Shown: positions 38,732 to 64,000 of the stretch, one piece after another
Layout of the letters: every line of letters begins with the position of its first letter
Position numbering within the stretch: position 1 is the first letter of the stretch
From: Schmidtea nova
Lineage: Eukaryota
Reading direction: 5' to 3'
Assembly: GCA_044892505.1 (NCBI GenBank)
Contig: CM097882.1
Coordinates: 545,290,001-545,354,000 of the forward strand
Length of the DNA stretch: 64,000 bases
The notes under the pieces: generated by a model
The model's input: only the letters and a program-made list of their open reading frames with translations
What the model was told of the DNA's origin: nothing
The model's database searches: none
Made by a program: the position numbers and the translations under genes

Positions 38732-40912
38732 GTAAAAAACATTTTTATCAGATTATAATGAAATTTGAATCAATATTAATATATGTGAGAGTAAAAATTA
38801 TCAAGAAATCGCCAGCTTTAATTAAAACAGTTTTCTTTTATTGAATGTAATTATATTTCTATGAAGATTCATACCACATAATAAATAGTAAACTAGAAAT
38901 AAAAATATTTATTAAATTATTAATTAAAAAAAATAATTATAAAATAAAAGGGAAATAATATAAAATGTAACTGATTTCTAATTTAGTTTATTGTAGGTTG
39001 AAATGGTACTTTAAGCAAAACTCAAAACGTCTTTAAATTTATCGGATAAATAAATTTTCCTTTTTCCGATAAAATATTATCTGAAGTTGAAAATTTTCAT
39101 TCATTCATAGTTAAAATCTTTGCTATAGTTTTGAATAATAAAGGTTTTCGTTGGGTTTTCAATAGTGAATCCGAGACCCATTTTCAATCCGTGATTTCGG
39201 TACTGAAATTTCTTAGTTCCGGGATTTCCGTTGCGGGTTCTGGAATCGAAACTTTGCATTATCTGACAAAAATAGATTAAAGTCTTAGGATTCAAGTTTA
39301 TTCACCAAAAATATTTTTAGTTACGTGAAAATTTAAAAGAAAAGAAAATCATCAATTAATACTACAGTAGTCTATCATTACTGTTAATATATGCAATAAA
39401 TTCCTGACTAATTTATCATTTACTTATCATAGCAGTTTTAAAAATAAATCGTGCTTCCAAATATTTGCTTATTGATTAAAAAAAGTGAGCAGAGCGTAGA
39501 TAAAAAAAGAAAAAACTTTGCGGCGTGACATTTTTGCAGATTTTGAAAATTTGTAAACTAAAAGTTCGCTATTTCTAAACTAATTTCTACACATTTATAT
39601 ATAATAATGCTAAATTTAGTCAAAGACATAAATTTTTATCAGAAAATCTAACACTAAAAACAATTTACTCTTAACAATCACTTAAAAAAATAATTCAGTA
39701 AAGCTTAATTTCCAGATATTTTGGATGATATTTTGCAAAAGAATATAATTGAAATACCATAAATTTAAAAAACTAGACTTCAAATAACTGAACAGACTGA
39801 ACAGGTAAATGACTTTTTAAATAGTATTATTCAGGTTTTAAAGCAACACAAAGTGCTGAAAATCGTTACGTTTGTGAATAAATGATATTAAATTATAATT
39901 AAATGCATTGTATTTTTAAAAGTTGACAAATAACTCAAATACTTTTTAAAAATTAATTTTTGATGTCAAATTCCCGGGATTGAAAATCTTCAGCACCGGA
40001 ATATTGGTATTATAAATGACCAGTACTAAGGGATCACGGTTTTGGTACTCCCAGTTATGGATTCACTAGTTTTCAAGAAATGTAGTTGGATATCCTCAAA
40101 ACTTTGACTTCTGTGTTCTTTTGATTAACAATGATGAACCAACAAATTAAACAATTTATTTTTCAAATATAACAAAAGAATAAAAATTTNNNNNNNNNNN
40201 NNNNNNNNNNNNNNNNNNNNNNNNNNNNNNNNNNNNNNNNNNNNNNNNNNNNNNNNNNNNNNNNNNNNNNNNNNNNNNNNNNNNNNNNNNNNNNNNNNNN
40301 NNNNNNNNNNNNNNNNNNNNNNTCCACATTTAACATAAATAATAAGAATAATAAGAAATAAATAGGAATAAATTAAATTAATGTAATTACGAGAAGTTTC
40401 AGAAAGGATGAATTAAAAAGTAATAAAAATATTAATTTAATATCAAAATTAGAAGAAAGTAAATGGAAATGTAAAAGTGTTAAAGAAAAAATGATATTTA
40501 ATTATATTTAAATAAAAAGAAAGTAAAGCAAATAAGTAGAATTACAGAAAATAATAAAAATCAAAACAGCAAATTGCTAGCAATTGACAACAAAACCAAT
40601 TGATTTTAGCGTTAATAAAATTTATTATTTGTGCTGATCTGATGATCAGCTTCAAGCTGATTGGTTCAGCATTTGATCTGGTCAGTATAAATACTGATCC
40701 AGATTCAGTTAAAGTTAGATGAAATTTTTTTTCTTTCAACATTTTGTTGTATGCAAATTTTGTGAAGACAATATTTTTGAAAAACTAAAAGGTATGAGTA
40801 TTTTGTTTTTTATTATATTATGAATTCTGACATTGCCATTATAGTTATTTAAATGAAATTAATAAACCTTTCTGAATATGTTACATTCTTTTGAATATAG
40901 AATTAAGTTAAG

Positions 40913-41200
40913 CTTCTTCCACTGTGCAATCAGTGGAAGGAGACGACTCTATTTATCTATTTATTTATCTTTTATTGAGCTTCTTCCATCGTGTAATCGG
41001 TGGAAGGAGACAACCTTAGTGTAGTATGCTAACCATTACTTACAAGTATATATTTTTTAGAAGTAATTTTTGGGTCGAGCTTCTTCCACTGTGCAATCAG
41101 TGGAAGGAGGCGAATATATATTATTTATATACTGTAGTTATAGTAGAGATATACGTACGATTCAAGGGGCTCCGATCACCGTGCAATCGGTGAAATGGAG
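40913..41200 (+). other. Four hairpins with conserved TGYAAT loop (40913-42, 40980-41009, 41080-109, 41170-200); copies at +22231
   Basis: 12-bp stems CTTCTTCCACTG/CAGTGGAAGGAG with compensatory variants ATCG/CGGT and CACCG/CGGTG. Confidence 0.75.
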
Positions 41201-41671
41201 GCATACTGTGCCGAGTAGAATGACTGCTCCGTACAGTTGGGCCGTCCGACCGGTGTAAAGCGCCGTGAAGAGGGTAGGATTTTTATTTAACCATGATTTC
41301 TAACCTTAATTTTCACTGGATATTATAACCAGTTGAAGTTTTTATTTCATAACAGATTTGAATTTCATGAATTTATAGTTGAGTAGAGTTTGATTTTAGT
41401 TTGAGACAGATATAGCTGTGATTTTATTAATCTGATTTTATATTTGAATTCACCGAATGTTAATCTATATTTTTTGATTGTCACATCTGGGGTTTGTGGG
41501 CATAAAGCGGCAGATACACGGTTAAGAATTTGTACATAATACATTTTTTAAGCATAACCATTTCAAAAATCGATAATTTAATAGCCTAGTGATCTACTAC
41601 GCAAGTAACATAGCAGCAATAGGCTATAGGATCAAACATTCCACATAAATGATTAAATATAATTACTTATC

Positions 41672-41807
41672 CTGAACCCTGTACATAGGGCAGCAGATCT
41701 TAGTTTATTTAAATAATTTCGTATCCTGATTGCTGTACATAGCACAGGCATGAATAAATAAAATATATCATGAAATAAAAGTATCTGATCGCTGTATATA
41801 GCGACAG
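41672..41807 (+). other. Three bulged hairpins with GTAYAT loop
   Basis: CTG-bulge-CCCT/AGGG, TGCT/AGCA or TCGCT/AGCGA-CAG; the upper stems differ in sequence but all pair. Confidence 0.7.
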
Positions 41808-41934
41808 TGTTGAAAGTGTAATAGGTAAACCATTTTCTCTTCCTGAATTAACAATTAACAGTCGTCGAAAGTACGAGAATTGTTCAAATCAAAACAACCA
41901 ATTTATGTTAATAAATCATCTTGAATTTTAGAGA

Positions 41935-42525
41935 ATGTCAGTCAACTCAACCACTAATCAAGCAGAATTGGATAAAGCATGGAGGATAATTCGCAGCCTC
42001 GAAAAGGAAATGCTGCGCAAATCCGAAAAACTAAAAGAAGCCGATGGTATAATTTCCAACCTGAAGAAAAGCTGGTTTAATCCAGAACAAATGAAAGCAC
42101 AAATTATAAAAAATCAACGCTCACAGCGAGCCAACAGCGAGATACAAATGGAATTAGATTCTACAAAGATGGAGCTGAAAAAGTGTCTGAAATCTGTGAC
42201 GGCTTCATATCTAAATCAAGAGCTCCGACAGCTCATTCGACCAATCACTTATCAGCATTGGGCTGACGAGAAAGCAGGATGTTCGAAGGGAACGAACACC
42301 GAGGAACCCTCTCAGGTTCAAGCAACAACAGCAACCAGTACACCAAAGAACACGACAAATCCGGAAGTCAAGAAGAAAAAGAAGAGTAAGATGGGAGCGC
42401 GCCAGCGTCGCTGGAAGAAACAAGTGCTTCAGCAAATGGCACAACAATCGAAAGAAGTGCCCGAGATTGATCTAACAATGAACTTTGCAATATCGGATGA
42501 AGACATTACCAAATACTTTGAATAG
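41935..42525 (+). CDS. LTR-encoded orphan protein, 196 aa (coiled coil and basic NLS-like segment)
   Basis: Intact ORF with TTTTAG just upstream of the ATG, heptad-rich N-half, and KKKKKSKMGARQRRWKK. Confidence 0.65.
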   Translation: MSVNSTTNQAELDKAWRIIRSLEKEMLRKSEKLKEADGIISNLKKSWFNPEQMKAQIIKNQRSQRANSEIQMELDSTKMELKKCLKSVTASYLNQELRQLIRPITYQHWADEKAGCSKGTNTEEPSQVQATTATSTPKNTTNPEVKKKKKSKMGARQRRWKKQVLQQMAQQSKEVPEIDLTMNFAISDEDITKYFE

Positions 42526-43101
42526 AAATTCTGTGATTTAGTTATTTTCGCTTATTAAATAATTTTTGTTTTGTGTTTATTTTATTGTAAAGTATATGAA
42601 CTAAAGTATTTTATTAAAGGATTTCTAAATTAAGTTAAATGTAGATTATAATTAAAAGGTTGACCTGAACATAATAACAATAAGAGCATTAAAGAAATAA
42701 CATATTATAATTGATTAAAGATTATTTGTTGATATTGTAAAGAAGGGGCCGAAAGAAAAATTGAAAGTTGAAATATATTGTAAAGAAAAGGGGGCTAAAG
42801 AAATAATTGAAATGAAAGATAATGGATGCGGATAGATTAAAATTAAAGCGTAAGTCCTTCTATCGGCAGCGAGACGAACCCGTGAACATAAATGGGGAGT
42901 AGTTTTAGCAATAGAGCTCACCTGCCCATCATTGTTCAAACACCTTGCACATTTCCAACTCGATTATTACAGGGAAATGATCGAGGGTGCTCGTGTGATA
43001 TGTAAGCATTTTATGTAAGGTTTTGGATGGAGGAATCCCTAGAGCGTTTAGTTTAATTTTCTATTTTTGTTTTAACCCATCCGAACCGCCCAGCATAAAT
43101 T

Positions 43102-43119
43102 TGGGGGCTCAGCCGGGAT
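43102..43119 (+). promoter_or_regulatory. Primer-binding site, tRNA-Pro type
   Basis: TGGGGGCTCAGCCGGGAT matches the MLV tRNA-Pro PBS TGGGGGCTCGTCCGGGAT at 16/18 positions. Confidence 0.8.
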
Positions 43120-43483
43120 GAAAATGGTTTTTGTGCGAAAAATTGAATCCAATAATAACTAGGAGTTTTAAAGTACCCCTCAACCGAAAATTTAATTGAA
43201 TTTATGTTAGAAGTGAAAACAATATCAACAGAGAATTTTTGAAGAAACAATGAGTTAATAAATATAATAACAGACGATTAATAATTGACATTAAAATAAA
43301 ATAAATAAACATAAATAAATATGTCGGGACGACAATTTGACGAACCAGGTTTAACATCAGAAAACGAAATGTACCACTACTTTTGACCGACACAAATCAA
43401 ACAAATAGAGAAACAAGATATGGAAATTTTTATTTTTTAACAAATAAAGCAGCAAACATATTAACAATATCAATTATTTAGCA

Positions 43484-43945
43484 ATGAACGATAAATTAAA
43501 AGAAACAGAAGAATTCTTAAACACGGAAAACAAAACATACGATGAATTATGCGAGAAAATAAGTCGAATAAGAGAATCCGGATTCACAGAACCCATGACA
43601 CAAACCGAAGAGACAACAGAGCTGATAAAAATATTGGAAAGAGTAGACAAAATAGATATAACAACTAGATACAAGTGGTACCGAACGAGATTAGAAAATG
43701 CTGATGTAAACATAAAATGCAGACAGTTAGAACAACAATTAACTCCAACATACCACAAGTGGACGATACAAGGAACTGAGACAGCTAAGAAATTTAAACT
43801 GTGCTACATATGTCGAGGAAGAGAGAATAAAATCATGTTTTTACCATGTGGACATTTCCGGTTTTGTAGAATCTGTGCAGCCAATTGCGACAAATGCCCG
43901 ATGTGCAATCTCGAAATAGACGAAAGAATTATTGTGTATTTATAA
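43484..43945 (+). CDS. Coiled coil plus C-terminal IAP/MDM2-type RING protein, 153 aa
   Basis: CYICRGRENKIMFLPCGHFRFCRICAANCDKCPMCNLEIDERIIVYL* is the typical extreme C-terminal RING of IAP-like E3 ligases; no BIR domain seen. Confidence 0.85.
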   Translation: MNDKLKETEEFLNTENKTYDELCEKISRIRESGFTEPMTQTEETTELIKILERVDKIDITTRYKWYRTRLENADVNIKCRQLEQQLTPTYHKWTIQGTETAKKFKLCYICRGRENKIMFLPCGHFRFCRICAANCDKCPMCNLEIDERIIVYL

Positions 43946-43985
43946 TAAATTTTGAAATTGAATAATATGATTTGTGATAAAGGAT

Positions 43986-44160
43986 AATGAGAATTAATAT
44001 GATAATTCATAATGAGAATTAATATGAGAATTCATAATGAGAATTAATATGATAATTCATAATGAGAATTAATATGAGAATTCGTAATAAGAATTAATAT
44101 GAGAATTCATAATGAGAATTAATATGATAATTGATAATGAGAATTAATAATGAGAATTTA
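43986..44160. repeat. 25-bp tandem repeat, ~6.5 copies
   Basis: Unit AATGAGAATTAATATGA(T/G)AATTCAT. Confidence 0.9.
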
Positions 44161-44517
44161 AAATGAGAGTTGATAATGGCAATGACAGAGATCATAATAA
44201 CAATTGATATGTATAAATAATTTTTGAGCTGCTCACGAGTAGTCCGTTAAGCACCCATTGGGAGGAACCAACTGATCAACTTACCCGAGATGTATAGAAA
44301 GGGGCCCATCGCGGAAATTGGAAAGCTTTTGTGATGTGACTGATCACCACATCTTGCATTAGTAGACCAATGCGATCTTTTTGTATATTTTGGTTGGGGT
44401 GAAAGGTAGGGAAAATTCAATGAGGTTTAAGTGCGCGCAGAAAATATAAATAAAAAGAGAGAACAGAAAACTGATCAGTAAGAAATAAAGAGAATAAGAG
44501 TTAATATGATAACTAAG

Positions 44518-45511
44518 AATAATAGCAACATGAGAATATGAACTCATGATTGTAGGCAACATAAGAATTTGAACCTATGATTGCAGTGAATAATAGCAAC
44601 ATGAGAATATGAACTCATGATTGTAGGCAACATAAGAATTTGAACCTATGATTGCAGTGAATAATGGTAACATGAGAATATAAACTCATGATTGTAGGCA
44701 ACATAAGAATTTGAACCTATGATTGCAGTGAATAATAGCAACATGAGAATATGAACTCATGATTGTAGGCAACATAAGAATTTGAACCTATGATTGCAGT
44801 GAATAATAGCAACATGAGAATATGAACTCATGATTGTAGGCAACATAAGAATTTGAACCTATGATTGCAGTGAATAATAGCAACATGAATATATGAACTC
44901 ATGATTGTAGGCAACATAAGAATTTGAACCTATGATTGCAGTGAATAATAGCAACATGAGAATATGAACTCATGATTGTAGGCAACATAAGAATTTGAAC
45001 CTATGATTGCAGTGAATAATAGCAACATGAGAATATGAACTCATGATTGTAGGCAACATAAGAATTTGAACCTATGATTGCAGTGAATAATAGCAACATG
45101 AGAATATGAACTCATGATTGTAGGCAACATAAGAATTTGAACCTATGATTGCAGTGAATAATAGCAACATGAGAATATGAACTCATGATTGTAGGCAACA
45201 TAAGAATTTGAACCTATGATTGCAGTGAATAATAGCAACATGAGAATATGAACTCATGATTGTAGGCAACATAAGAATTTGAACCTATGATTGCAGTGAA
45301 TAATAGCAACATGAGAATATGAACTCATGATTGTAGGCAACATAAGAATTTGAACCTATGATTGCAGTGAATAATAGCAACATGAGAATATGAACTCATG
45401 ATTGTAGGCAACATAAGAATTTGAACCTATGATTGCAGTGAATAATGGTAACATGAGAATATGAACTCATGATTGTTGGCAACATAAGGAATGTGAACCT
45501 ATGATTGCAAT
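44518..45511. repeat. 71-bp tandem array, ~14 nearly identical copies, decaying to ~45690
   Basis: Unit AATAATAGCAACATGAGAATATGAACTCATGATTGTAGGCAACATAAGAATTTGAACCTATGATTGCAGTG. Confidence 0.95.
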
Positions 45512-46246
45512 AGTGATAGCAACAGAAGGAATATGAACCTTTGATTGCACTGTGGATAACAACATAAGGAATATGAACCTATGGTTGTAATTGTGGAAAT
45601 TTAGTAAATTTAGCAACCTAAGGAATTTGAACCCAGGTTTGCAATTATGTGAAATTAAATGACAACGAAAGGAATATGAACCTAGAGTTGAAGTCGTCGA
45701 CGACGTGAGAATAGTGAACATTAGAGTTTGAGTAATAAAAGTAAAGATGATTAAGAAAACTAGAGATACAGTATGCATACAAGTAGAAATAAGAATAGGA
45801 GAAATTAGAGTTGACTAGAAATAGTGAGAATAGTGAGTAATGATGAGAAATTAGAGATGACCAAGGAAAATTGGTAGAAATAGTGAGAATAATGAGTAAT
45901 GATGATACAATGAATAGTAATAAAATGATAAAACTGAGTCAGGAGAACTCAAGGGAATTAAAGCGTTTGAGCGACAAATTTATTTGGGAGACTGAGGGAA
46001 AAGTAATGAATTTATTTGATAACGATAGATAATTATTACGACCATATAGATAATTGTTACCAGTGAATAGATGATTTAAATAGACTTAAATAAAGGGGAA
46101 ACCGGGAATGGGGAAACAATGGAAACCCAATAATGAGGAATAAAAGCGCAACGATAACAATGATGTATCGTTGAAGTGACTTTTTAATTTAGATATACGG
46201 AACAGAACAAGTCAAACCAACCAACCAATCAATCATAATACGATAA

Positions 46247-55800: not shown

Positions 55801-58579
55801 TAAAGACAACTCAATATTAGACGTGACATTATTAGGTCCAAACTGGGAAATGTTGAATTTCATTAAAACGATAACAAACCAGGAAGAGATAGACTATTTG
55901 ACAGAAACCGTAAAAGGACCAAGCGTATTGACAATGATGCAAAACATCAAATTGACAGAAGAAGTACTAAACTGGAAAATACCAAATACAAATAAACCAG
56001 CATTTAAAGTTAACAAGTTTATGGAGAAAAATCGAAATTGGTGTATCCAAAGCGCACTAATAACTTATATATGGCCCGAAATTGTAGAAATTTTCATGAG
56101 AAGAGAAGACCTGAGATTTACAAACAAGCCCAAAGAAACGGAAAAGATGGTTAAATGGAAAGAATTGATGAAAACACACCTTCAAAGTTGGATAAAAGCC
56201 AAGAAAGAAATTATACAGTATCAGTTAGACAACAAAAAGATACCCGAAGATATAGAATTCCAAGAATTCGAAGCAAGTAACTTAACATCACTATATTATG
56301 CAAAACTAATAGAAACAAGTAATGTCGAGGACGACATTTTTAACGAGCCAGGGAGAGATAATAATACTGACAATGATGATGACGATGAAGAAAACAAGGA
56401 CGACGAGAGAAATAATGACGATGATAATAATAAAAACAATGACGACGAGAGAAATAAAGACGATGATGATGAAAACAATCACGGAAATCCAGATAACCAC
56501 GAACAAACCAACAAAGAAGACGAGAATCAAGAGGGAAATACAAAGAAACAAGAATCCAAAGAACAAAGAGAAGACAACCCTAAAAACAATCATGAAAAGA
56601 AAGGAACAAGTTACAGAAGGAATCCATTATTCAGACCAGAAGTATTAATGTTCGCAATAATCATAACACTTATGGGACAATGTGAAGCAACGAAACAAGA
56701 GATATCAGTAGAAATGGAAGTACCAATACAAAAAGCATCAACACAAATAATGAATTCAAAGGAAATTGAGCAAGTATGTTGGGTCAAAGAGAACGAAATT
56801 CTCGGAGATAACAACCTATTACGATGTATAATCCCAAACCCCGATCGAAAAACTATAATAATAGACGAGATGGATATGGAAACATGGTACAGAATATGTA
56901 CAATCAGAAAACCCAAAGACGAAAAATCACACAAAACAGTTACATGCCAAGTATACAAGACACCCAAAGTCCGATACGAGTTCACCAATGGAATAGACCT
57001 TCCAGGACCATTTTATTTTAGAATAACAAGAGCACCAGCATCAAGAAAAGTCTTACAACCACCAAGAACCAAGATAACAACACCAAGTATAAGGAATACA
57101 ACGGTTAAACCAGAACCAAAAAGACGAACGAAACAAACCACAAGAGTAATCTACAATTCCAAGTTATTATGTATAGCACTTATTATGACAATACTGAAGC
57201 GATTAGAAGAAGGAATAGAAATGGATACAATGACATTAATAGACATGGAAGAAACACAAATGACAAATCAAAAATGTTGGTTTAGAAACGATGAAAAATT
57301 AGAATTAAAGGAATCAAGAGAAATTCAGAAATTGGAAGCGAGTAAAACGAACAAAGTAATCAAGATAATAAAGATAAAAACGGACAGAATTCATAAACTA
57401 TGCTTATTGGAAAAAGAGAGAAACAAGAAAGGAATAACCAATTGTAAAACATTCCAAGCAGGAAAAATAATAACGTTTGCAAGAAAAATAGGAAAAGGAA
57501 ACAAACAGAATTTCCAGAAATTAACCATAACGTTAGAAATAACGGGAATAGAACAAAACGTAAACGGAGTATGCTGGAGAAAATACGAGAAAGAAACGAA
57601 TAATCATAAATCATCACAATGTCAAACAGTCAGAGGAACAACTGCAGTACAAATAAAAAGCTTAGAAAGAAATCAAACGTATGAAATATGCCTAGTAAAG
57701 GAAAATGATCAAATAACGAAAGAAGATTTAGAATGCAGAATATACAAAGCACCGAACAGAGTAAAAACCAGTAAAACAATACGAAAGAATAAAAGACAAC
57801 AAAAACCGAAGTATACCACTACCGAAAGTCAAACAGAACCAGAGAGAAAAACCTCAGCAACACTTATACTTTGGAAATTAGATGACAAAACAGTGGAAAT
57901 ATGTTGGTCAATAATCAAGAAATACAAAGAAAGACAACCACAACAATGCGAAAAGATGAATAAAGAAGAGGAGATCAGAATTCAGAACCTACAATTGGAC
58001 AAACAATACGAAATATGCGCAATAGAAAAGGCAGATAAATTTGGAAACCAACAAGAAAAATGTGGAAACTACTATACACCGACAAATACAACGATCAAAG
58101 GAAGAATCAAGAAACTAACATTCGGAGAATTGAATCAAACAACGAAACAAATGGAAAACGAGGAAACAATAATAGATTCTTATGCCAAATGGAAACCAGA
58201 AAAAGTAATCCATGAAGTCAAAAGGAAACAACAAGAACGAAAACAATTGGAACTCAAATTAAAAGGACAATATGGACCAATGATCAATCAAAGCAAATTC
58301 ACCCAAATCAATGTTAACAAGCAAGGAAGAGAACTAATTGGAGTAGGAATACTGGCAGTATGTGCACCAGTAATAATAATACTCTCAATAATATGGCTAT
58401 GGGACATAATAAAAAAGAAACCAACCAGACAATGGCCAGATATAAAGATTATGAATTGTAAAATCAAGATACCAGAAGAAGTAAAGAAAGAATTCCAAAG
58501 AAGAACCAAAGGCAAAGAATTTTGGAAGCAGATCGAAGACGAGGAGCGACACGATGAAAAAGCAGTGATGATAGTATAG
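49844..58579 (+). CDS. 2911-aa multidomain polyprotein: Ubl-like, AT-hook, Bcl-2-like, class III envelope, retropepsin, ankyrins, FN3-like membrane protein
   Basis: Uninterrupted 8.7-kb ORF; domain motifs are listed as separate features. Confidence 0.92.
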   Translation: MEDKYEPEIGRVCMVIRKVMPTDLDGPETAAIWLETQRRKADELIELLKGNVQGKRRTIKGLAEFFVAGGEDIISLRKVAKAVTEYKRVNEWCPEQLDNVIKKWRNQENSQEPPQKIHLRIIYPDREKEELWVRLTEKIRDVKKRLKYEPPFHLQHQGRSLENDMEIWITPAQLELANTLTVDAIANQPLKLKEKRVKESGDTQNLKKTMQIKPGTSAIQYETSSIKIQERTQPQPYDTEEILTDSDDMLEELAKLTKEKGNNIFERVQELPTTSKAINTQDEVEQEIEIEEVNEISEEEARGANTENERLTQEMEKWWEQRNNEPRDVTEETGRETRLIETGTTMDKRPRGRPKTDPANVINKTKEERRQEKWEVCLKKLNKIAEAKDQEITQKCQGEGWISKTLMEILAIIDPELKKWWRINEISDKAKALHSAIAPILPELIKEKTKSSHLDWQGTTTLIKRLTEDAENDNKYVIAIAYTIYNLLTLSRGNPKSTALEKYIKNTANIIAKEIEPYVISKGGWETFAKTNQRNSQAKNMKKKFEEILGELEKEKSGTGGGKSSLNLNSIIMMILIWLISVEGATAFEVFDCDQMALGEKYSLRGTEQCKDATPTELKVLHSKQIYHVYQEADLIKTTVNECKIYKTRFAFYCGHRHYSAIVMPGTEREAIMLQGEDCNKLFKHGEVETRDRIKIRGKAGVILQQTYYVAGAITGGEGYCQGATYPIFGVPATNMVVIDTYTVELKAYEAYFDPATGEMKTLSMCKIEASTCQTGMSTLTYRARANECQLQLLKEAEFDEVQGKIFQEEDDDEVARGKRLQETVKGEKPFTTKVQEKEVRMRETPTVLVTSNANIGMRFVKGKPALKCGVSMLETNYPGIYVSRQAAPNAKPKIDTTDIKLHVYLNNKLDFLFHKGQASMEKIYYDLINNDCILNREILKTKLAVAITNPDSAMPLLPLNEGHFGRVVGEVMYVYICQKTQANLATTTRIRQGQCTNELEIEYKGKIRYVQPVTRIINPVSFEPNPFNCSNAYGPLYQKPDGNWVMFPSRSEVQPPREFELMQLSKGRKFSNIDVNNGGIYSAKDLEAARQNILFPARREAVLSSIVTITGGTSYQGGPNYELLLSPAHFRKATENMMKAMWGRFLIFGQMMAGILGVILIIQIIRVIITQMLACFDIYKREKKINWKLIAGFLPFLAKTMVLHGHSKDIHRIKRLLKILAKMKGTDEDVGRKFKKIMADEQARLQLKRERKGLWERIRGDKTQDDSSDDDDNNDDCEGGQRYGNQAPQYSDKNPAEAWKCHAPPPTMYQEPLQVSGHRAMQMMPMTTLYPIIPEDYKLRRCRSMDPQDDSLTIAVMSSNTGPVLTTTIEINGKEIEAMIDTGANISAIDIKWIPQEQRQEIERTNVHVIACSKEIVEVAGRWWVKIRHQNIEIETYVAVIPALSVPCIIGTDLMPTLFKEIIIDLGTMRLKDRTEKICAMKTKVINSKQIMIPEERIMTRSQTIRINMLRAEEINTDSQVDSEKIDVDKEIIRKAKEINERWEIRQGKDVLWDIRQIISDYARGCPTKPIIIELLKKIPEILVLQDTGGATALHNAISWGKTEKVKEFLKIAKETNQNLDIVNRELETPMMTATLSLADKEIVDMLINAEFNWTARDRRGNTVLNHAIMSENQMILKHITTNLTWEIDELIKGEIMKEAIRKGNTKTIWKLIQWKWPDNKTWVLDINKEFSEGQNALLRYLLEFTCDQRTMLALMNRGNIKISKNEEEYKLEVEKEALFRKIWVWCQKQIRKDISYKNLNDFQEKYKIIIKEYKKLVEILNDPEKFNQAINQKEESKRILTPLFNAKIDYQERLDAIHKKAKELLPEFKDTKYALEILGAIVEKVHAYAKGIYNGNDIIIIKREMPVAFLLTKERIMPIHRALRAGKDSKVIEIARLMHQCGCDMNMIDEKGDTLMVYAARAKTKIKVLEELYKAGAGLIGKTSKDNSILDVTLLGPNWEMLNFIKTITNQEEIDYLTETVKGPSVLTMMQNIKLTEEVLNWKIPNTNKPAFKVNKFMEKNRNWCIQSALITYIWPEIVEIFMRREDLRFTNKPKETEKMVKWKELMKTHLQSWIKAKKEIIQYQLDNKKIPEDIEFQEFEASNLTSLYYAKLIETSNVEDDIFNEPGRDNNTDNDDDDEENKDDERNNDDDNNKNNDDERNKDDDDENNHGNPDNHEQTNKEDENQEGNTKKQESKEQREDNPKNNHEKKGTSYRRNPLFRPEVLMFAIIITLMGQCEATKQEISVEMEVPIQKASTQIMNSKEIEQVCWVKENEILGDNNLLRCIIPNPDRKTIIIDEMDMETWYRICTIRKPKDEKSHKTVTCQVYKTPKVRYEFTNGIDLPGPFYFRITRAPASRKVLQPPRTKITTPSIRNTTVKPEPKRRTKQTTRVIYNSKLLCIALIMTILKRLEEGIEMDTMTLIDMEETQMTNQKCWFRNDEKLELKESREIQKLEASKTNKVIKIIKIKTDRIHKLCLLEKERNKKGITNCKTFQAGKIITFARKIGKGNKQNFQKLTITLEITGIEQNVNGVCWRKYEKETNNHKSSQCQTVRGTTAVQIKSLERNQTYEICLVKENDQITKEDLECRIYKAPNRVKTSKTIRKNKRQQKPKYTTTESQTEPERKTSATLILWKLDDKTVEICWSIIKKYKERQPQQCEKMNKEEEIRIQNLQLDKQYEICAIEKADKFGNQQEKCGNYYTPTNTTIKGRIKKLTFGELNQTTKQMENEETIIDSYAKWKPEKVIHEVKRKQQERKQLELKLKGQYGPMINQSKFTQINVNKQGRELIGVGILAVCAPVIIILSIIWLWDIIKKKPTRQWPDIKIMNCKIKIPEEVKKEFQRRTKGKEFWKQIEDEERHDEKAVMIV
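50990..51430 (+). other. Bcl-2-like domain within the polyprotein
   Basis: BH1-like LDWQGTTTLIK (cf. NWGRIVAL) and BH2-like YVISKGGWETF (cf. WI...GGW..F) at the usual spacing. Confidence 0.65.
51548..53460 (+). other. Envelope glycoprotein, chuvirus G / herpes gB-like (class III) type
   Basis: Internal signal SIIMMILIWLISVEGATA|FEVFDC, YSL...C, CKIYKTRFAFYCGHRHYS, YCQGATY, NNKLDFLF, C-terminal W..F.IFGQMMAGILGVILII TM and a second hydrophobic stretch. Confidence 0.8.
53930..54260 (+). other. Retroviral-type aspartic protease
   Basis: IEINGKEIEAMIDTGANISAI (DTG at 53987-95) and PCIIGTDL. Confidence 0.9.
54600..55870 (+). other. Two ankyrin-repeat clusters (~54600-54900 and ~55595-55870)
   Basis: DTGGATALHNAISWG, NRELETPMMTA, DRRGNTVLNHAI; PIHRAL, DEKGDTLMVYAA, KDNSILDVT. 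Confidence 0.8.
56639..58410 (+). other. Signal-like segment, four FN3-like repeats and a C-terminal TM
   Basis: Four units of xCW...I..L.....Y.IC.......C..Y.T, then TM LIGVGILAVCAPVIIILSIIWLW. Confidence 0.6.
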
Positions 58580-58701: not shown

Positions 58702-59037
58702 ATGAATGTACAAGGAGAAACAACCGAAATGACTTTGACTATGCGATGGAAAGCACAATGTGAAACGTTAGTTCGATCAATCAATGCACTACAGAATCAA
58801 TTGGTAGAGAAGCAAAATATATTAGCAGATTGTTACAACAATATTTTTGAACAGTTACATAAAATAGAAGAGCAACAGAGAATAATAACAGAACTGACAA
58901 GAGAGAATCAGAGATTGAGACAAACAGTGGAAATGAATCAACTATCAAGAAGAGAAGAATCAGAAGGTCAATGGCTAGATTGGGTAATAAATGGATTAGA
59001 GAATGGTATGGAACCAGATTCAACAAGCGAACCATAG
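58702..59037 (+). CDS. Orphan coiled-coil protein, 111 aa
   Basis: Intact ORF in the element's sense orientation, heptad pattern, TTTTAG before the ATG. Confidence 0.6.
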   Translation: MNVQGETTEMTLTMRWKAQCETLVRSINALQNQLVEKQNILADCYNNIFEQLHKIEEQQRIITELTRENQRLRQTVEMNQLSRREESEGQWLDWVINGLENGMEPDSTSEP

Positions 59038-59134
59038 TCAAATTGTAGCGGAAAATTGTATATATGTAAAAATAAAACTCTAGAGAAATCAAAAAACAAA
59101 GAACAAATCAATGTATGTATATATTATTGTAGAA

Positions 59135-60490
59135 ATGGATAAAGAGGAACGAGCAGTCGAGATTTTGAGAGCAGCAAACAGAAAGTGGAACAAGAGATTT
59201 GTATGTGGATATTGTAATAATTTATTACGGAAACCAAAGCAAACCACCTGTGGATGTAGATTATGTACTAGATGTGTACAAGTGTTAGAGTTGAAAAGAA
59301 TAACAGAATGTCCAGAATGTAAAGAAGGACAAATAGTGTTAGACGAAACAAGACCAGATAGAGCAACTCAGAGAGAAATCATGAGCATACTAATTGAATG
59401 TATAAATCCACCGTGCATATGGCAAGGACAAATCAGCGAAATTGAAAATCATATAGGAAATTGTGAAGAAAAGAGAAGCGAATGTGAAAAGTGTAAAGAA
59501 ACGATAATTTTAAAAGACAAAGAAAAACACAGAGATGAATGCAAAGAGGAAGAAATCGCATGTGAATATTGCGAAATTCGAGAAACAAGGAGAAAAATTG
59601 AAGAGGAACACATCAATATAAAAGAAGAAAAAATATGCGAACAGTATGTAGGAGTGTGCCCAAACAAATGTGAAATTACCGAAGAAGTGAAATTACGAGA
59701 ACATTGGGAAAAGTGTACAGAAATACCAAGAGAATGTCCTTACAACAGATATGGATGCAAAGAAAAGAAATCTCAACAAAATATGAAACAACATTTAGAA
59801 ACAGAAGCAATCAATCATATTGAAATGACAGACAGAACAATTCAGAAATTAGAAAAAGAAGTGGAATCTCATAAAATAATGATGAACCTATTATTAGAAA
59901 CGAGAGAACAATTTGAATTAACCCGAGAAAAGATGGAAAAGAAAATAATAGCCATCAAGGAATTAGCAAAAGGAATGAAAGTGCAATATAACAAGTTAAT
60001 ACAAGAAATTGATGAGAAAAAAGATTTACCAATAGCACCTTATGTGTGGAAAATAACGGATTTCCGAAATAAATTGGAAGATGCACGAAGCTTCAAGAAA
60101 ACTGCGGTAATAAGCCCACCATTTTACTTATGGAAAAACGGGGCTAAAGTGAGATTGAAAGTATATCCAAACGGAGATGGGACAAGTATTGGAAAACACG
60201 TATCGATATTTTTTGCGTTTTGCAAAGGAGAATATGACTATTTAATCGATTGGCCGATAGGAGTAGGAGTAATGATAAAAATCAGGGGTTTAAACGAAAC
60301 CATAGAAAAGAGATTCACGACAGAAAAAGGAGCAGTTATGAGTAACAGACCAACAGAAGAATGTGGATTAGCAAGTGGAGAACCACACTTTGTATTACAA
60401 AGCAAGATATGGGGATTATTGTATGAGGACACCTTATACATAGAAATGGAAAGGAACGAGAAGGCAGATAGAAAAGGATGGTTGGCGTAG
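59135..60490 (+). CDS. Full-length TRAF-like protein (RING, TRAF zinc fingers, coiled coil, MATH), 451 aa from ATG 59135, intronless
   Basis: CGYC..LLRKPKQTTCGCRLCTRC...CPEC; C...C.W.G...EIENH...C; CPYNRYGC...MKQHL; MATH YVWKITDF...SPPFY...YPNGDG...HVSIFF...GEYD..I.WP. Confidence 0.92.
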   Translation: MDKEERAVEILRAANRKWNKRFVCGYCNNLLRKPKQTTCGCRLCTRCVQVLELKRITECPECKEGQIVLDETRPDRATQREIMSILIECINPPCIWQGQISEIENHIGNCEEKRSECEKCKETIILKDKEKHRDECKEEEIACEYCEIRETRRKIEEEHINIKEEKICEQYVGVCPNKCEITEEVKLREHWEKCTEIPRECPYNRYGCKEKKSQQNMKQHLETEAINHIEMTDRTIQKLEKEVESHKIMMNLLLETREQFELTREKMEKKIIAIKELAKGMKVQYNKLIQEIDEKKDLPIAPYVWKITDFRNKLEDARSFKKTAVISPPFYLWKNGAKVRLKVYPNGDGTSIGKHVSIFFAFCKGEYDYLIDWPIGVGVMIKIRGLNETIEKRFTTEKGAVMSNRPTEECGLASGEPHFVLQSKIWGLLYEDTLYIEMERNEKADRKGWLA

Positions 60491-60595
60491 CAAGAGAAAA
60501 TGATCGTGTAAATAAACTGTACAAAACAATATAAAATGATAAATAAACAAAAATAATAAAAGTAGCCTGATTGAAAATATTTGTAATTATAGAAA

Positions 60596-61699
60596 ATGGG
60601 AAACGTCGAAATCAGTTTACAAGAAGTAACCGAACATCAAGATGAAGTTATTTGTGAGCTTTTAGAACAAATTGAAAGTTGGATCCACGCATATTACCAC
60701 AAACAAAAAGAAGTAGAAAGACAAGCCGAACAAATAACAGAAGCCAAAAGATTAAAGCAATTAAGTCAAGATAAAATAGACGAACTATATGAATTATTGG
60801 AGAAACAAAAAGAATATTATAAAAAGATGATGAAAGAACGACGAGAAGAAAAAGAGCGAGAACGAACAGAAATGGAACGGAAAATGTACTCCATTACCGA
60901 GCAAGCAAGATATTGGAAAAAAGAAGCGAAAGAATCTTATACGAAAGCAAGAGAAATAATCGAAAGAACGGCGTACAGCGATGATTGGAAATTATTTGAA
61001 GAAATCGATAAATTAAAAGAGGAATTAGAACAGAAAACCTATCAGGAAATATCGAGCAAAAAATGGAATAAAAAGAGACAACAATTTATCAGAGAGCAAG
61101 CAGGAAAAATTAAACAACTTATGCACCAGATTGAAAGATCGGAAAGAGAATTGTATTTCAGTAAACAACAATCAGATGCAAACCTCAGAGCAGGGATGCA
61201 GAAAGAGGAAGATATGAAGCGCGATATTAATGGTTATCAAGGAGTAATCACTCAAAAGAAGATAGAATTAAAGAAAACTAAAGAAAGATTAGAAGAAGCA
61301 AAACAAAGCTATGAAGAAAATTTATTAAAATTAGAAGAAGCAAAACAAAGCTATGAGGAAAATTTATTAAATTTAACCAAAGAAAATGAAGAGTTGAAAC
61401 AAAAATTGATACAAAAATTAACACCACCAAAAGAGACAGATATCACCAAAGCAGTAATAAAAATGATGGAAGAGGAAGAGAAAAACAATAAAATAACAGA
61501 ATTAGAAAAACAGATCGAAGCATTAACAGAACAATCAAACTATTTAGAATATCTGTTGGATGAAGAAATCCAATTATCACACTTCTATCGAGACGAAGTA
61601 ACAATGTGGAGAAACACGATAGTGTGGTTACCACCCCCTACAAACCAAGTGGAACCTCAAGATGAAGGTTTTCACGAACCCAATGAGTCGTTAGTATAA
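60596..61699 (+). CDS. Orphan long coiled-coil protein, 367 aa
   Basis: Intact E/K/Q-rich ORF with a 14-aa internal duplication (LEEAKQSYEENLL). Confidence 0.7.
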   Translation: MGNVEISLQEVTEHQDEVICELLEQIESWIHAYYHKQKEVERQAEQITEAKRLKQLSQDKIDELYELLEKQKEYYKKMMKERREEKERERTEMERKMYSITEQARYWKKEAKESYTKAREIIERTAYSDDWKLFEEIDKLKEELEQKTYQEISSKKWNKKRQQFIREQAGKIKQLMHQIERSERELYFSKQQSDANLRAGMQKEEDMKRDINGYQGVITQKKIELKKTKERLEEAKQSYEENLLKLEEAKQSYEENLLNLTKENEELKQKLIQKLTPPKETDITKAVIKMMEEEEKNNKITELEKQIEALTEQSNYLEYLLDEEIQLSHFYRDEVTMWRNTIVWLPPPTNQVEPQDEGFHEPNESLV

Positions 61700-61774
61700 A
61701 AGAAGTGCGAAAATTAGTTGTAAATATCTGTAAAATAACCATGTCAAACTGTATTGACAAATTTGTAAAGTGAA

Positions 61775-62338
61775 ATGAAGAAGCTCACAATACTGATAAT
61801 CCTAAATGTAATCGAAATCACCCAACAAAGAGAAGACCGTGCGATATCAAAAGAAAATCTACAAGTCTTACCCGAGAAAATCTATAAAGAAATAGATGAT
61901 CTATTAAAAGAAACAGTCAAAGAAATCTCTCAAATTCAATTGTCAACAGCACCTAACCCAGTAGCAACGCAACAAACCCTGTGTAAAATCAATAACAAAT
62001 TAGAGAAGATTCGAAAAACCCTAAAAGAAAGTAAAGAAACTATAAAGAGTTTACATCGAGCAGAAATTCAATACCAAGAGAGATGGATCGTTGCGATCAT
62101 AATCGTGTTAACAATTAGTACAACAACCTGCGCAATTACCATTCTCATCGCAGTATACAGAATAAAGATCTTAAAACAAAAACAATCAATCATCAATCAA
62201 ACAACAGCACATGATGACAATGCCCGAAGACGAATGAGAAATCAGCTCAACAGAATACGAACCCAATACGAGTTACCAGTAATTCCACAGAACCAGTCCA
62301 ATCCAGTGCGAGTTATGAACTATTTATATAAACCATAA
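61775..62338 (+). CDS. Orphan predicted membrane protein, 187 aa (signal, coiled coil, TM)
   Basis: MKKLTILIILNVIEI signal-like start, coiled coil, and TM WIVAIIIVLTISTTTCAITILIAVY. Confidence 0.65.
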   Translation: MKKLTILIILNVIEITQQREDRAISKENLQVLPEKIYKEIDDLLKETVKEISQIQLSTAPNPVATQQTLCKINNKLEKIRKTLKESKETIKSLHRAEIQYQERWIVAIIIVLTISTTTCAITILIAVYRIKILKQKQSIINQTTAHDDNARRRMRNQLNRIRTQYELPVIPQNQSNPVRVMNYLYKP

Positions 62339-62500
62339 GTACTTAACAAAATATTTGATTAACAATTATCTGAATTTTCTTTATATTTTCTTCGTGATTA
62401 CGTATAGAATAAACTCACCTTATGTGAATCTGTATACATATGTACCAAGCGTAAAAATTTTTTTTTTATGAATGTTGAATATAAGTAAATTGTATAATTA

Positions 62501-62534
62501 ATTGCGGGACGCAATTTTAGGGGTCCCCGAGTGA
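62501..62534 (+). promoter_or_regulatory. Putative plus-strand priming region before the 3' LTR
   Basis: ATTGCG-GGA-CGCAAT hairpin then TTTAGGGGTCCCCGAGTGA just before TGTTGG; a weak purine tract. Confidence 0.35.
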
Positions 62535-64000
62535 TGTTGGATCCACCATTTGGTCCACATTTAACATAAATAATAAGAATAATAAGAAATAAATAGGAAT
62601 AAATTAAATTAATGTAATTACGAGAAGTTTCAGAAAGGATGAATTAAAAAGTAATAAAAATATTAATTTAATATCAAAATTAGAAGAAAGTAAATGGAAA
62701 ATGTAAAAGTGTTAAAGAAAAAATGATATTTAATTATATTTAAATAAAAAGAAAGTAAAGCAAATAAGTAGAATTACAGAAAATAATAAAAATCAAAACA
62801 GCAAATTGCTAGCAATTGACAACAAACCAATTGATTTTAGCGTTAATAAAATTTATTATTTGTGCTGATCTGATGATCAGCTTCAAGCTGATTGGTTCAG
62901 CATTTGATCTGGTCAGTATAAATACTGATCCAGATTCAGTTAAAGTTAGATGAAATTTTTTTTCTTTCAACATTTTGTTGTATGCAAATTTTGTGAAGAC
63001 AATATTTTTGAAAAACTAAAAGGTATGAGTATTTTGTTTTTTATTATATTATGAATTCTGACATTGCCATTATAGTTATTTAAATGAAATTAATAAACCT
63101 TTCTGAATATGTTACATTCTTTTGAATATAGAATTAAGTTAAGCTTCTTCCACTGTGCAATCAGTGGAAGGAGACGACTCTATTTATCTATTTATTTATC
63201 TTTTATTGAGCTTCTTCCATCGTGTAATCGGTGGAAGGAGACAACCTTAGTGTAGTATGCTAACCATTACTTACAAGTATATATTTTTTAGAAGTAATTT
63301 TTGGGTCGAGCTTCTTCCACTGTGCAATCAGTGGAAGGAGGCGAATATATATTATTTATATACTGTAGTTATAGTAGAGATATACGTACGATTCAAGGGG
63401 CTCCGATCACCGTGCAATCGGTGAAATGGAGGCATACTGTGCCGAGTAGAATGACTGCTCCGTACAGTTGGGCCGTCCGACCGGTGTAAAGCGCCGTGAA
63501 GAGGGTAGGATTTTTATTTAACCATGATTTCTAACCTTAATTTTCACTGGATATTATAACCAGTTGAAGTTTTTATTTCATAACAGATTTGATTTTCATG
63601 AGTTTATAGTTGAGTAGAGTTTGATTTTAGTTTGAGACAGATATAGCTGTGATTTTATTAATCTGATTTTATATTTGAATTCACCGAATGTTAATCTATA
63701 TTTTTTGATTGTCACATCTGGGGTTTGTGGGCATAAAGCGGCAGATACACGGTTAAGAATTTGTACATAATACATTTTTTAAACATAACCATTTCAAAAA
63801 TCGATAATTTAATAGCGTAGTGATCTACTACGCAAGTAACATAGCAGCAATAGGCTATAGGATCAAACATTCCACATAAATGATTAAATATAATTACTTA
63901 TCCTGAACCCTGTACATAGGGCAGCAGATCTTAGTTTATTTAAATAATTTCGTATCCTGATTGCTGTACATAGCACAGGCATGAATAAATAAAATATATC
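62535..64000 (+). repeat. 3' LTR (truncated by the window end)
   Basis: 62554-64000 matches 40323-41769. The start at TGTTGG is inferred. Confidence 0.9.

What the first reader, a model, noticed from the sequence alone, without database searches (positions are those of the whole stretch)
40304..64000. Giant enveloped LTR element carrying a virus-like cell-death/NF-kB/ubiquitin toolkit
One LTR-bounded unit encodes an IAP-type RING, 3 Ubl-like domains, a Bcl-2-like domain, ankyrin clusters, an FN3 membrane protein and a complete TRAF, alongside gag, env and protease. Large DNA viruses use the same families (vBcl-2, IAP, ankyrin/IkB mimics) to suppress apoptosis and immunity, so convergence in a retroelement is striking. 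Size and setting recall the giant planarian 'Burro' elements (from memory, not verified). This domain order may be new.
Basis: partly seen in the sequence, partly recalled or inferred. Interest (0 to 1): 0.95.

Follow-up and report, generated by a model that had tools for sequence, protein, structure and literature searches.

The report
Pol-less giant Burro-like LTR element
This is a real, young, roughly 24-kb retrovirus-like element of the already described planarian 'Burro' kind. It carries gag, an in-frame viral fusion glycoprotein, protease and host-like RING, TRAF, ankyrin and FN3 modules, but this copy has no reverse transcriptase or integrase.

Summary
A direct repeat of at least 1,447 nt at 99.6% identity (40323-41769 and 62554-64000) brackets about 20.8 kb that is 80% coding on one strand.

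**Confirmed by profile, PDB or fold searches**
- gag, with three CCHC knuckles
- a Monjiviricetes-type fusion glycoprotein (Pfam E 6e-68) in frame with a retropepsin
- two ankyrin clusters
- an XIAP/cIAP-type RING
- a complete TRAF
- four FN3-like repeats ahead of a membrane anchor

**Not confirmed**
- The three Ubl domains found no support.
- The Bcl-2-like domain rests only on a weak BH2-like match to Bcl-xL.

There is no reverse transcriptase, RNase H or integrase anywhere in the unit. The closest relative found (45% identical env-PR, ENA contig) does carry RT-RH-IN after the protease. The long gag-to-FN3 reading frame has four interruptions.

**Prior description.** The architecture (gag-CCHC, RING, TRAF, Ubl, BCL2-like, in-frame env, PR, ankyrin) is already published for Burro/GYPSM1 elements of Schmidtea mediterranea (PMC6431247). 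This is therefore a non-autonomous member of a known kind, not a new class. The assembly gap hides the start of the 5' LTR and the window end cuts the 3' LTR, so LTR ends and target-site duplication cannot be seen.

The parts
40323..41769 (+). 5' copy of the long direct repeat (putative 5' LTR). Its start is hidden by the assembly gap at 40190-40322, and its true 3' end lies at or beyond 41769.
   Evidence: 99.59% identical to 62554-64000 over 1,448 columns.
41935..42525 (+). First internal ORF, 196 aa, helical and charged, with no family match.
43484..43945 (+). Accessory ORF, 153 aa, with a C-terminal IAP-type RING (aa 101-152) and no BIR domain.
   Evidence: zf-C3HC4_3 at E 2.8e-11. The best PDB matches are XIAP, cIAP and ML-IAP RINGs at E 4e-10.
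43984..45585 (.). Non-coding tandem arrays between the RING ORF and gag: 25-nt unit x 7.6 (43984-44175) and 71-nt unit x about 14 (44363-45585).
   Evidence: Tandem repeats are also drawn in published Burro maps (PMC6431247 Fig. 2 legend).
46340..58579 (+). Long gag-to-FN3 reading frame (about 4,080 codons), treated as one broken gene with four interruptions: two changes of frame and two single in-frame stops. Its longest uninterrupted piece is 2,911 aa.
   Evidence: counts only. Composition predicts about 333 stops by chance over this span.
46862..47137 (+). Gag capsid-like domain (Retrotrans_gag).
   Evidence: PF03732 at E 1.6e-4, 22.3 bits against a cut-off of 24.1.
47416..47568 (+). Three CCHC zinc knuckles (nucleocapsid).
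   Evidence: Pattern scan. Three knuckles are reported for S. mediterranea Burro.
48046..48348 (+). Unconfirmed.
   Evidence: No Pfam or PDB support.
49325..49627 (+). Second Ubl candidate. Only sub-threshold hints.
   Evidence: OTU1_UBXL at E 0.037. Ubiquilin-3 Ubl at E 0.51.
50156..50428 (+). Third Ubl candidate, directly upstream of the Bcl-2-like stretch. Unconfirmed here.
   Evidence: No hits. [quoted passage not shown]
50996..51523 (+). Bcl-2-like candidate: an all-helical stretch with a BH2-like motif, followed about 35 residues later by a hydrophobic segment.
   Evidence: All 37 PDB hits at E up to 10 are Bcl-xL entries aligned over the BH2 region, E 0.4-1.2. No Pfam hit. AF2 pLDDT 38.6. 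No homologues among 1.84 billion representatives.
51566..53623 (+). Env: a Monjiviricetes-type viral fusion glycoprotein with a preceding signal/anchor segment (polyprotein aa 564-588), a membrane anchor (aa 1152-1170) and 15 Cys.
   Evidence: PF24664 at E 5.9e-68. 45% identity to P0001. tblastn to L001 at 1e-140. Hydrophobicity scan.
53945..54217 (+). Retroviral-type aspartyl protease with a DTG motif, in frame with env.
   Evidence: RVP at E 2e-8. DTG motif. DDI1-type retropepsin hits with profile A3.
54557..54904 (+). Ankyrin repeat cluster 1. It sits where relatives carry RT.
   Evidence: Ank_2 at E 2.4e-11. PDB DARPin and Kidins220 matches.
55586..55849 (+). Ankyrin repeat cluster 2.
   Evidence: PDB DARPin at E 2.5e-7. 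Ank_2 at E 0.0028.
56711..58108 (+). Four cysteine-bearing FN3-like repeats, preceded by a signal-like hydrophobic segment (polyprotein aa 2265-2280).
   Evidence: Alignment A2. AF2 pLDDT 73.8 and pTM 0.63. The Foldseek top 50 are all FN3, probability about 1, TM 0.46-0.60, E 0.03-0.1.
58334..58411 (+). Membrane anchor after the FN3-like repeats, followed by a short tail.
   Evidence: Hydrophobicity scan.
58702..59037 (+). Small ORF, 111 aa, with helical/coiled-coil character and no family match.
59111..60490 (+). Complete TRAF (RING, TRAF zinc fingers, coiled coil, MATH) as a separate ORF.
   Evidence: MATH_2 at 2.7e-20 and zf-TRAF at 5e-8. TRAF2/3/5 MATH at about 1e-19 and TRAF5/6 RING-ZF at about 1e-12.
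60596..61699 (+). Coiled-coil ORF, 367 aa, with no family match.
61775..62338 (+). Small single-pass membrane protein ORF, 187 aa.
62554..64000 (+). 3' copy of the direct repeat (putative 3' LTR), cut by the window end. Its true start lies between 62339 and 62554.

Best explanation
The region is a recently inserted, non-autonomous copy of a Burro/GYPSM1-type giant Ty3/Gypsy-like endogenous retrovirus, with the GAG-ENV-(POL) order known from flatworms.

**Shown**
- Two near-identical long direct repeats bracket about 20.8 kb of one-strand, A-rich, densely coding DNA.
- The layout runs: small accessory ORFs (one with an IAP-type RING), tandem arrays, then one very long reading frame. That frame holds gag, three CCHC knuckles, a helical Bcl-2-like stretch, a hydrophobic segment, a viral fusion glycoprotein with its anchor, retropepsin, two ankyrin clusters, a signal-like segment, four FN3-like repeats and an anchor.
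- Separate ORFs follow for a TRAF, a coiled-coil protein and a small membrane protein.
- RT, RNase H and integrase are absent.

**Inferred**
- The unit is transcribed from the 5' LTR and translated as a membrane-threaded polyprotein. Its alternating signal and anchor segments would place env and the FN3 module on the lumenal side. Gag, the Bcl-2-like part, the protease and the ankyrins would lie on the cytosolic side. The protease and host signal peptidase would cut the pieces apart.
- The RING, TRAF, ankyrin and possibly Bcl-2-like modules would act on host ubiquitin, TRAF and cell-death signalling, as the published Burro accounts suggest.
- Lacking pol, this copy could only have been copied with enzymes supplied by pol-bearing relatives. 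The pol region was probably lost or replaced downstream of the protease while the frame stayed open.
- The four interruptions may be recent decay or draft-sequence errors.
For: - Repeat pair at 99.59% over 1,448 columns, spacing 22,231.
- 80% of the internal region is + strand ORF, 45% A, and ln P of the 2,911-codon ORF by chance is about -248.
- Domains: PF24664 at 5.9e-68, RVP at 2e-8, Ank_2, zf-C3HC4_3, zf-TRAF with MATH, and Retrotrans_gag. Three CCHC knuckles. PDB matches. FN3 fold.
- Hydrophobic segments alternate in the order signal, anchor, signal, anchor.
- No RT, RH or IN in Pfam scans of every ORF listed at 90 aa or more, and no tblastn match in 40323-64000 to the pol pieces of the nearest relative.
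- In that relative (L001, env-PR 36-45% identical) RVT_1, RT_RNaseH and integrase follow the protease.
- Literature: Burro/GYPSM1 carries gag with three CCHC, a RING, MATH_TRAF_C, Ubi2/SUMO-like, BCL2-like, env in frame between BCL2 and PR, ankyrin repeats and tandem repeats (PMC6431247). Flatworm errantiviruses have the GAG-ENV-POL order with a class III env (PMC13524379).
Against: - No Burro/GYPSM1 sequence was available to any tool, so family membership rests on architecture and a literature description, not on alignment.
- The host species is not identified.
- Neither LTR is seen end to end, and no target-site duplication, primer-binding site or polypurine tract could be fixed.
- TRAF lies downstream as its own ORF. 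No BIR and no dUTPase were found. Total length is about 24 kb against more than 30 kb for Burro1. This may therefore be a different lineage.
- Only one copy is visible, so 'non-autonomous family' cannot be told apart from a one-off deletion or an assembly collapse.
- The Bcl-2 and Ubl modules are unconfirmed.
Confidence: 0.72

Rival explanations
1. The element is a full, autonomous Burro-type provirus, and its pol region is missing only because the draft assembly collapsed or mis-joined copies.
For: The window has eight N gaps, and the left repeat starts exactly at a gap. That is typical of a repeat-troubled draft. Burro copies number in the thousands in S. mediterranea, which favours chimeric assembly.
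Against: The protease-to-ankyrin junction lies inside an uninterrupted 2,911-codon ORF with no N and no loss of frame. A random mis-join would rarely keep the frame open.
Confidence: 0.1
2. The repeats are not LTRs. The window shows a 22.2-kb segmental or tandem duplication, or a nested or recombinant arrangement of two elements, whose second unit runs past the window end.
For: Both repeat copies are truncated by the gap and the window end, and no termini, target-site duplication or primer-binding site were seen.
Against: The 3' copy begins at most 215 nt after the last ORF, and the first ORF starts about 170 nt after the last aligned base of the 5' copy. This is the expected LTR-internal-LTR layout. 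The sequence left of the gap does not match the sequence before the 3' copy.
Confidence: 0.1
3. The region is a cluster of host genes (RING, TRAF, ankyrin, FN3 receptor) that happens to lie next to an endogenous negative-strand-virus glycoprotein and retroelement debris.
For: TRAF genes are greatly expanded in planarians (PMC6109357). Intronless TRAF arrays next to retroelements exist elsewhere (L002).
Against: Env, protease, ankyrins and FN3 repeats share one uninterrupted ORF. All ORFs are on one strand, intronless and tightly packed between the repeats. The same combination is published as a retroelement.
Confidence: 0.04

Closest known systems
[quoted passage not shown] 2018; Arkhipova and Yushenova 2019, PMC6431247)
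   Same: - Giant LTR unit with internal tandem repeats.
- Gag with three CCHC knuckles.
- RING, TRAF/MATH and ankyrin modules, and a BCL2-like stretch just upstream of env.
- Env in frame with, and upstream of, the protease, with similarity to mononegavirus fusion glycoproteins.
- An apoptosis and ubiquitin theme in the cargo.
   Different: - No dUTPase-RT-RNase H-integrase after the protease.
- No BIR domain found.
- TRAF is a separate ORF downstream, not inside the polyprotein before the Ubl.
- An FN3-like membrane module that the review does not mention.
- About 24 kb rather than more than 30 kb.
Flatworm, nematode and bryozoan GAG-ENV-POL errantivirus-like Ty3/Gypsy elements with a class III (gB-type) Env (PMC13524379)
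   Same: Env lies between gag and the pol-side enzymes, and the env was acquired from a virus.
   Different: Those elements are compact and carry POL. This one lacks RT and IN and carries about 10 kb of extra modules. The fold class of this env was not tested here.
ENA contig ERZ25039515:contig_33609 (L001, protein P0001)
   Same: Env-protease fusion at 36-45% identity, with many invariant cysteines.
   Different: RT, RNase H and integrase follow its protease. No similarity to the ankyrin, FN3, TRAF or RING parts.
Non-autonomous LTR derivatives (LARD-type elements, cited in PMC6431247)
   Same: LTR-bounded, lacking pol, and presumably dependent on enzymes of autonomous relatives.
   Different: LARDs are largely non-coding. 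This unit keeps long open gag, env, protease and cargo frames.
Cell-death and signalling mimics of large DNA viruses (viral Bcl-2, IAP, ankyrin proteins)
   Same: The same families are represented: an IAP-type RING, ankyrins and a possible Bcl-2-like stretch.
   Different: The carrier is a retroelement. There is no BIR domain, so it is not an IAP. Bcl-2 homology is unproven. No functional data exist.

Membership tests
LTR retrotransposon (Ty3/Gypsy, Metaviridae-like) | Two long terminal direct repeats | tested here: met
   At least 1,447 nt, 99.59% identical, 22,231 apart. Both copies are truncated by the gap or the window end.
LTR retrotransposon (Ty3/Gypsy, Metaviridae-like) | LTR termini, target-site duplication, primer-binding site and polypurine tract | tested here: inconclusive
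   The 5' LTR start lies in the N gap and the 3' LTR end lies beyond the window. No clear signals were read, and there are no tRNA genes in the window to compare with.
LTR retrotransposon (Ty3/Gypsy, Metaviridae-like) | Gag with nucleocapsid knuckles, and an aspartyl protease | tested here: met
   Retrotrans_gag at 22.3 bits (cut-off 24.1), three CCHC knuckles, and RVP at E 2e-8 with DTG.
LTR retrotransposon (Ty3/Gypsy, Metaviridae-like) | Reverse transcriptase, RNase H and integrase | tested here: not met
   No Pfam hit in any ORF. No tblastn match in the element to the RT, RH or IN pieces of L001.
Burro / GYPSM1 | Env in frame between a BCL2-like motif and the protease | tested here: met
   Env and PR share one ORF. 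The upstream stretch has only a weak BH2-like match.
Burro / GYPSM1 | Accessory RING, MATH/TRAF, ankyrin and Ubl modules | tested here: met
   RING, TRAF and ankyrin are confirmed. Ubl is not confirmed.
Burro / GYPSM1 | BIR and dUTPase motifs, and PR-RT-RH-IN | tested here: not met
   None detected in Pfam scans.
Burro / GYPSM1 | Sequence similarity to catalogued Burro sequences, and a dugesiid planarian host | not testable with these tools
   No Repbase or planarian genome is within reach. The protein databases returned no close copies.
Monjiviricetes-type viral fusion glycoprotein (PF24664) | Profile match above the gathering score, with a signal and a membrane anchor | tested here: met
   229.8 bits against a cut-off of 27. 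Hydrophobic segments lie before and after it.
IAP | BIR domain | tested here: not met
   The 153-aa ORF has only the RING, and no BIR was found in neighbouring ORFs.
IAP | C-terminal RING of the IAP type | tested here: met
   XIAP, cIAP1/2 and ML-IAP RINGs are the top PDB matches.
TRAF | N-terminal RING, TRAF zinc fingers and C-terminal MATH/TRAF-C | tested here: met
Bcl-2 family | Bcl-2 profile match or helical-bundle fold | tested here: inconclusive
   No Pfam hit. A BH2-region match to Bcl-xL at E 0.4-1.2 only. AF2 pLDDT 38.6. No homologues from which to build a profile.
Ubiquitin-like domains | Profile match or beta-grasp fold | tested here: not met
   The only hints are sub-threshold, for the second candidate. 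No fold model could be obtained.
Fibronectin type III | Seven-strand beta sandwich of FN3 topology | tested here: met
   The AF2 model of repeat 3 has pLDDT 73.8. The top 50 PDB fold matches are all FN3, TM 0.46-0.60, with E only 0.03-0.1. The Pfam fn3 profile did not match.

The most novel reading that the evidence does not exclude
The copy may represent a stable, selected lineage of pol-less 'satellite' proviruses. Such a lineage would keep gag, a viral fusion glycoprotein, a protease and a large host-manipulating cargo (RING, TRAF, ankyrins, FN3 membrane protein) while relying on pol-bearing Burro relatives for copying. It would have swapped its pol region for ankyrin and FN3 modules rather than simply decaying. 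If many copies share the protease-to-ankyrin junction with open frames, this would be a new lifestyle among giant retroelements. It would also be a hidden source of the planarian TRAF expansion.
Probability: 0.2. Interest if true: 0.65.

Novelty: new member of a known kind. Interest (0 to 1): 0.4.

Why it matters
Burro-type elements are the largest known LTR retroelements, and they carry an unusual apoptosis and ubiquitin cargo.

- **Cargo kept without pol.** A young copy that keeps gag, env, protease and cargo in open frames but has no reverse transcriptase or integrase suggests that the cargo and particle-forming genes can persist, or spread, without their own replication enzymes.
- **Annotation of host families.** TRAF, RING, ankyrin and FN3 ORFs in planarian gene sets may belong to such elements rather than to the host. 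This bears on the reported planarian TRAF expansion (PMC6109357).
- **Limit on novelty.** The overall architecture is already published, so the value here is incremental.

Tried and rejected
- **Looking for other copies or the host.**
  - Exact-protein look-ups of the TRAF and the neighbouring ABCG ORF found nothing.
  - A whole-length search with the 2,911-aa ORF found nothing.
  - The TRAF search gave one distant hit, in an unrelated TRAF array.
  - HMMER of polyprotein aa 101-575 against 1.84 billion representatives gave zero hits.
  - Scans of metagenome contigs and IMG/VR with the env-PR alignment found nothing.
- **Bcl-2 and Ubl by structure.** Single-sequence AF2 of aa 1-575 gave pLDDT 38.6 and was not used for fold search. 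A profile of the three Ubl candidates found nothing in PDB, and they are not significantly similar to each other.
- **Env fold by sequence.** A profile of env-PR found no solved glycoprotein, only DDI1-type and retroviral proteases.
- **RNA genes.** Rfam and tRNA scans of the window were empty.
- **Literature.** The Grohme et al. 2018 paper is not held, so details of Burro-2 to -4 come second-hand from PMC6431247.
- **Rejected readings.**
  - An IAP: there is no BIR domain.
  - A complete, autonomous element: there is no pol.
  - A chance ORF: ln P is about -248.

Full report
**1. The gap and the repeat**

The window is AT-rich (about 31% G+C) and holds eight N runs, one of them at 40190-40322. 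No ORF of 100 aa or more touches that gap.

- A self-comparison of the window shows one long direct repeat, 40323-41769 against 62554-64000. It spans 1,448 columns with 4 mismatches and 2 gaps, 99.59% identical, and the copies are 22,231 nt apart.
- The left copy begins at the first base after the gap, and the right copy is cut by the window end. The repeat is therefore at least 1,447 nt long, and neither copy is seen whole.
- The sequence left of the gap matches nothing in or before the right copy. The left boundary of the repeat thus falls within the stretch that the gap hides; in the right copy it lies between 62339 and 62554.
- LTR termini, a target-site duplication, a primer-binding site and a polypurine tract could not be fixed. 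There are no tRNA genes or Rfam matches in the window.

**2. What lies between the repeats**

The 20,784-nt internal region is 45% A on the + strand, and 80% of it is + strand ORF. All ORFs with family matches are on the + strand. In order:

- a 196-aa helical ORF;
- a 153-aa ORF ending in a RING;
- two tandem arrays (25-nt and 71-nt units);
- a very long reading frame, 46340-58579;
- separate ORFs of 111, 459, 367 and 187 aa.

The long frame is open for 2,911 codons in its largest piece. Over its roughly 4,080 codons it has four interruptions, two changes of frame and two single in-frame stops (counts only). Base composition predicts about 333 stops over that span, and ln P of a stop-free run of 2,911 codons is about -248. 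By contrast, the TRAF, coiled-coil and small membrane ORFs are each separated from the preceding ORF by 5-20 stops, so they are genuinely separate ORFs.

Whether the four interruptions are decay, draft-sequence errors or natural ORF boundaries cannot be decided from one copy.

**3. Domains confirmed**

| Module | Evidence |
|---|---|
| Gag | Retrotrans_gag at E 1.6e-4, 22.3 bits, just below Pfam's 24.1 cut-off; three CCHC knuckles follow |
| Env | PF24664 'Monjiviricetes_fusion' at E 5.9e-68; a hydrophobic segment before it and a membrane anchor after it |
| Protease | RVP at E 2e-8 with DTG, in the same ORF as env |
| Ankyrin, two clusters | Pfam and PDB matches |
| RING | zf-C3HC4_3 at E 2.8e-11; best solved relatives are XIAP, cIAP2, cIAP1 and ML-IAP RINGs at E 4e-10 and weaker; no BIR domain found |
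| TRAF | MATH matches TRAF2/3/5/1 at about 1e-19; the N-terminal RING and zinc fingers match TRAF5/6 at about 1e-12 |
| FN3 | Four cysteine-bearing repeats at polyprotein aa 2290-2755; see below |

- The TRAF is complete as claimed.
- For FN3, an AF2 model of one repeat, using the four repeats as its alignment, reached pLDDT 73.8 and pTM 0.63. Its 50 best PDB fold matches are all FN3 domains, with probability about 1 and TM 0.46-0.60. E-values are only 0.03-0.1.
- A signal-like segment precedes the FN3 repeats and a strong membrane anchor follows them.

**4. Domains not confirmed**

- *Three Ubl candidates.* They have no Pfam or PDB support beyond sub-threshold hints for the second one: OTU1_UBXL at E 0.037 and ubiquilin-3 at E 0.51. 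A profile of the three finds nothing in PDB, and they are not significantly alike.
- *Bcl-2-like stretch.* There is no Pfam hit. In PDB, all 37 matches at E up to 10 are Bcl-xL entries aligned over the BH2 region, but at E 0.4-1.2, and they amount to one protein.
- *Structure and homologues.* Single-sequence AF2 of aa 1-575 was unusable at pLDDT 38.6. HMMER found no homologue of aa 101-575 among 1.84 billion representatives, so no profile could be built.
- *Position.* The stretch is helical, sits just upstream of env and is followed by a hydrophobic segment. This agrees with the published BCL2-like motif of Burro elements, and that is all that can be said.

**5. What is missing**

No RT, RNase H, integrase or dUTPase was found in any ORF.

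- The only relative of the env in the searched protein collection is P0001, at 45% identity, from an ENA contig.
- On that contig (L001) the env-protease gene is followed by RVT_1, RT_RNaseH and integrase genes.
- L001 matches this element only over polyprotein aa 570-1456, that is env plus protease.
- L001's RT, RH and IN pieces find nothing within 40323-64000.

In this copy the frame runs straight from the protease into the ankyrins. The unit is therefore not self-sufficient for reverse transcription or integration.

**6. Comparison with what is known**

- Arkhipova and Yushenova (2019, PMC6431247) summarise Jurka (2007) and Grohme et al. (2018). Burro/GYPSM1 elements of Schmidtea mediterranea are over 30 kb and number in the thousands of copies.
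- They carry gag with three CCHC knuckles, a RING (AIR1), Smc, MATH_TRAF_C, BIR, ankyrin repeats, a BCL2-like motif and an Ubi2/SUMO-like motif. Env lies in frame between BCL2 and PR, with hits to mononegavirus glycoproteins. A dUTPase and RT-RH-IN follow. Tandem repeats are drawn on the maps.
- In the Dugesia (Girardia) tigrina relative, TRAF is a separate accessory ORF.
- A 2026 survey reports the GAG-ENV-POL order with a class III env in Platyhelminthes (PMC13524379).
- Differences here: no pol, dUTPase or BIR; TRAF downstream as its own ORF; an FN3-like membrane module the review does not list; a length of about 24 kb.
- I could not align to any Burro sequence, because none is within reach of the tools. 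I also could not identify the host. A dugesiid planarian is an inference from composition and element type.

**7. How it most likely works**

Shown: the anatomy described above.

Inferred:

- Expression is LTR-driven and produces a polyprotein.
- The four hydrophobic segments alternate in the order signal, anchor, signal, anchor. This would place env and the FN3 module in the lumen and the gag, Bcl-2-like, protease and ankyrin parts in the cytosol.
- Cleavage would be by the element's protease and by host signal peptidase.
- The cargo would act on host ubiquitin, TRAF and cell-death pathways.
- Copying would depend on pol from related elements.
- The near-identity of the repeats suggests a recent origin of the pair.

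**8. Rivals**

- Assembly collapse of pol. This is possible in a gap-ridden draft, but the open frame across the protease-to-ankyrin junction argues against it.
- Segmental or tandem duplication instead of LTRs. This is not excluded, because both repeat copies are truncated.
- A host gene cluster. This is unlikely, because env, protease, ankyrins and FN3 repeats share one ORF.

**9. Verdict**

This is a real feature and a member of a known kind, the Burro-type giant retroelements. Its interesting twist is that it lacks pol while most of its frames stay open. Interest is moderate.

Consensus lines printed by the alignment tool were not used.
- My notes 1-2 and the outputs give bounds of ORF pieces as the ORF tool listed them. 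These bracket the interruptions of the long frame.
- In this report the frame is one part and only counts are given.

Noticed in passing
window 21655-23751 (-): An intronless ABCG-type half-transporter ORF (ABC_tran plus ABC2_membrane, 698 aa). It is probably a host gene, about 17 kb upstream of the element.
   Followed up: partly
window 35417-37066 (-) and 10317-11687 (+): A hAT-like transposase ORF (hAT dimerisation domain, DUF4371) and a second DUF4371 ORF. These are DNA-transposon remnants in the flank.
   Followed up: partly
window 28846-29334 (-), with neighbour ORF 27796-28440 (-): A fragment with a superfamily-3 'RNA_helicase' (PF00910) / Pox_A32-like P-loop match at E 3e-6. It may be a remnant of a virus or of another mobile element.
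   Followed up: no
window 3632-4063 and 19785-20216: A 432-nt inverted repeat at 99.3% identity, the arms about 16 kb apart. The first arm ends just before the N gap at 4065. It may mark the termini of a large DNA transposon or be an assembly artefact.
   Followed up: no
window 24598-24746 (-): A weak RNase H-like tblastn match (E 0.002) to the RNase H piece of L001. It lies outside the element and is probably debris of another retroelement.
   Followed up: no
window 40863-41119 and 63094-63350: Inside each repeat copy, a motif with a 9-bp-stem hairpin recurs at 167-nt spacing (family D4). Its function is unknown.
   Followed up: no
window 41770-62553: The element's internal region is 45% A on the coding strand, against 21.5% T. 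This is a strong strand bias.
   Followed up: partly
L002 (ENA ERZ25069267 ctg9808), whole locus: An array of intronless TRAF/MATH ORFs lies next to a Pao-type reverse transcriptase gene in an unidentified eukaryotic contig. It is another case of TRAF genes beside retroelements.
   Followed up: no
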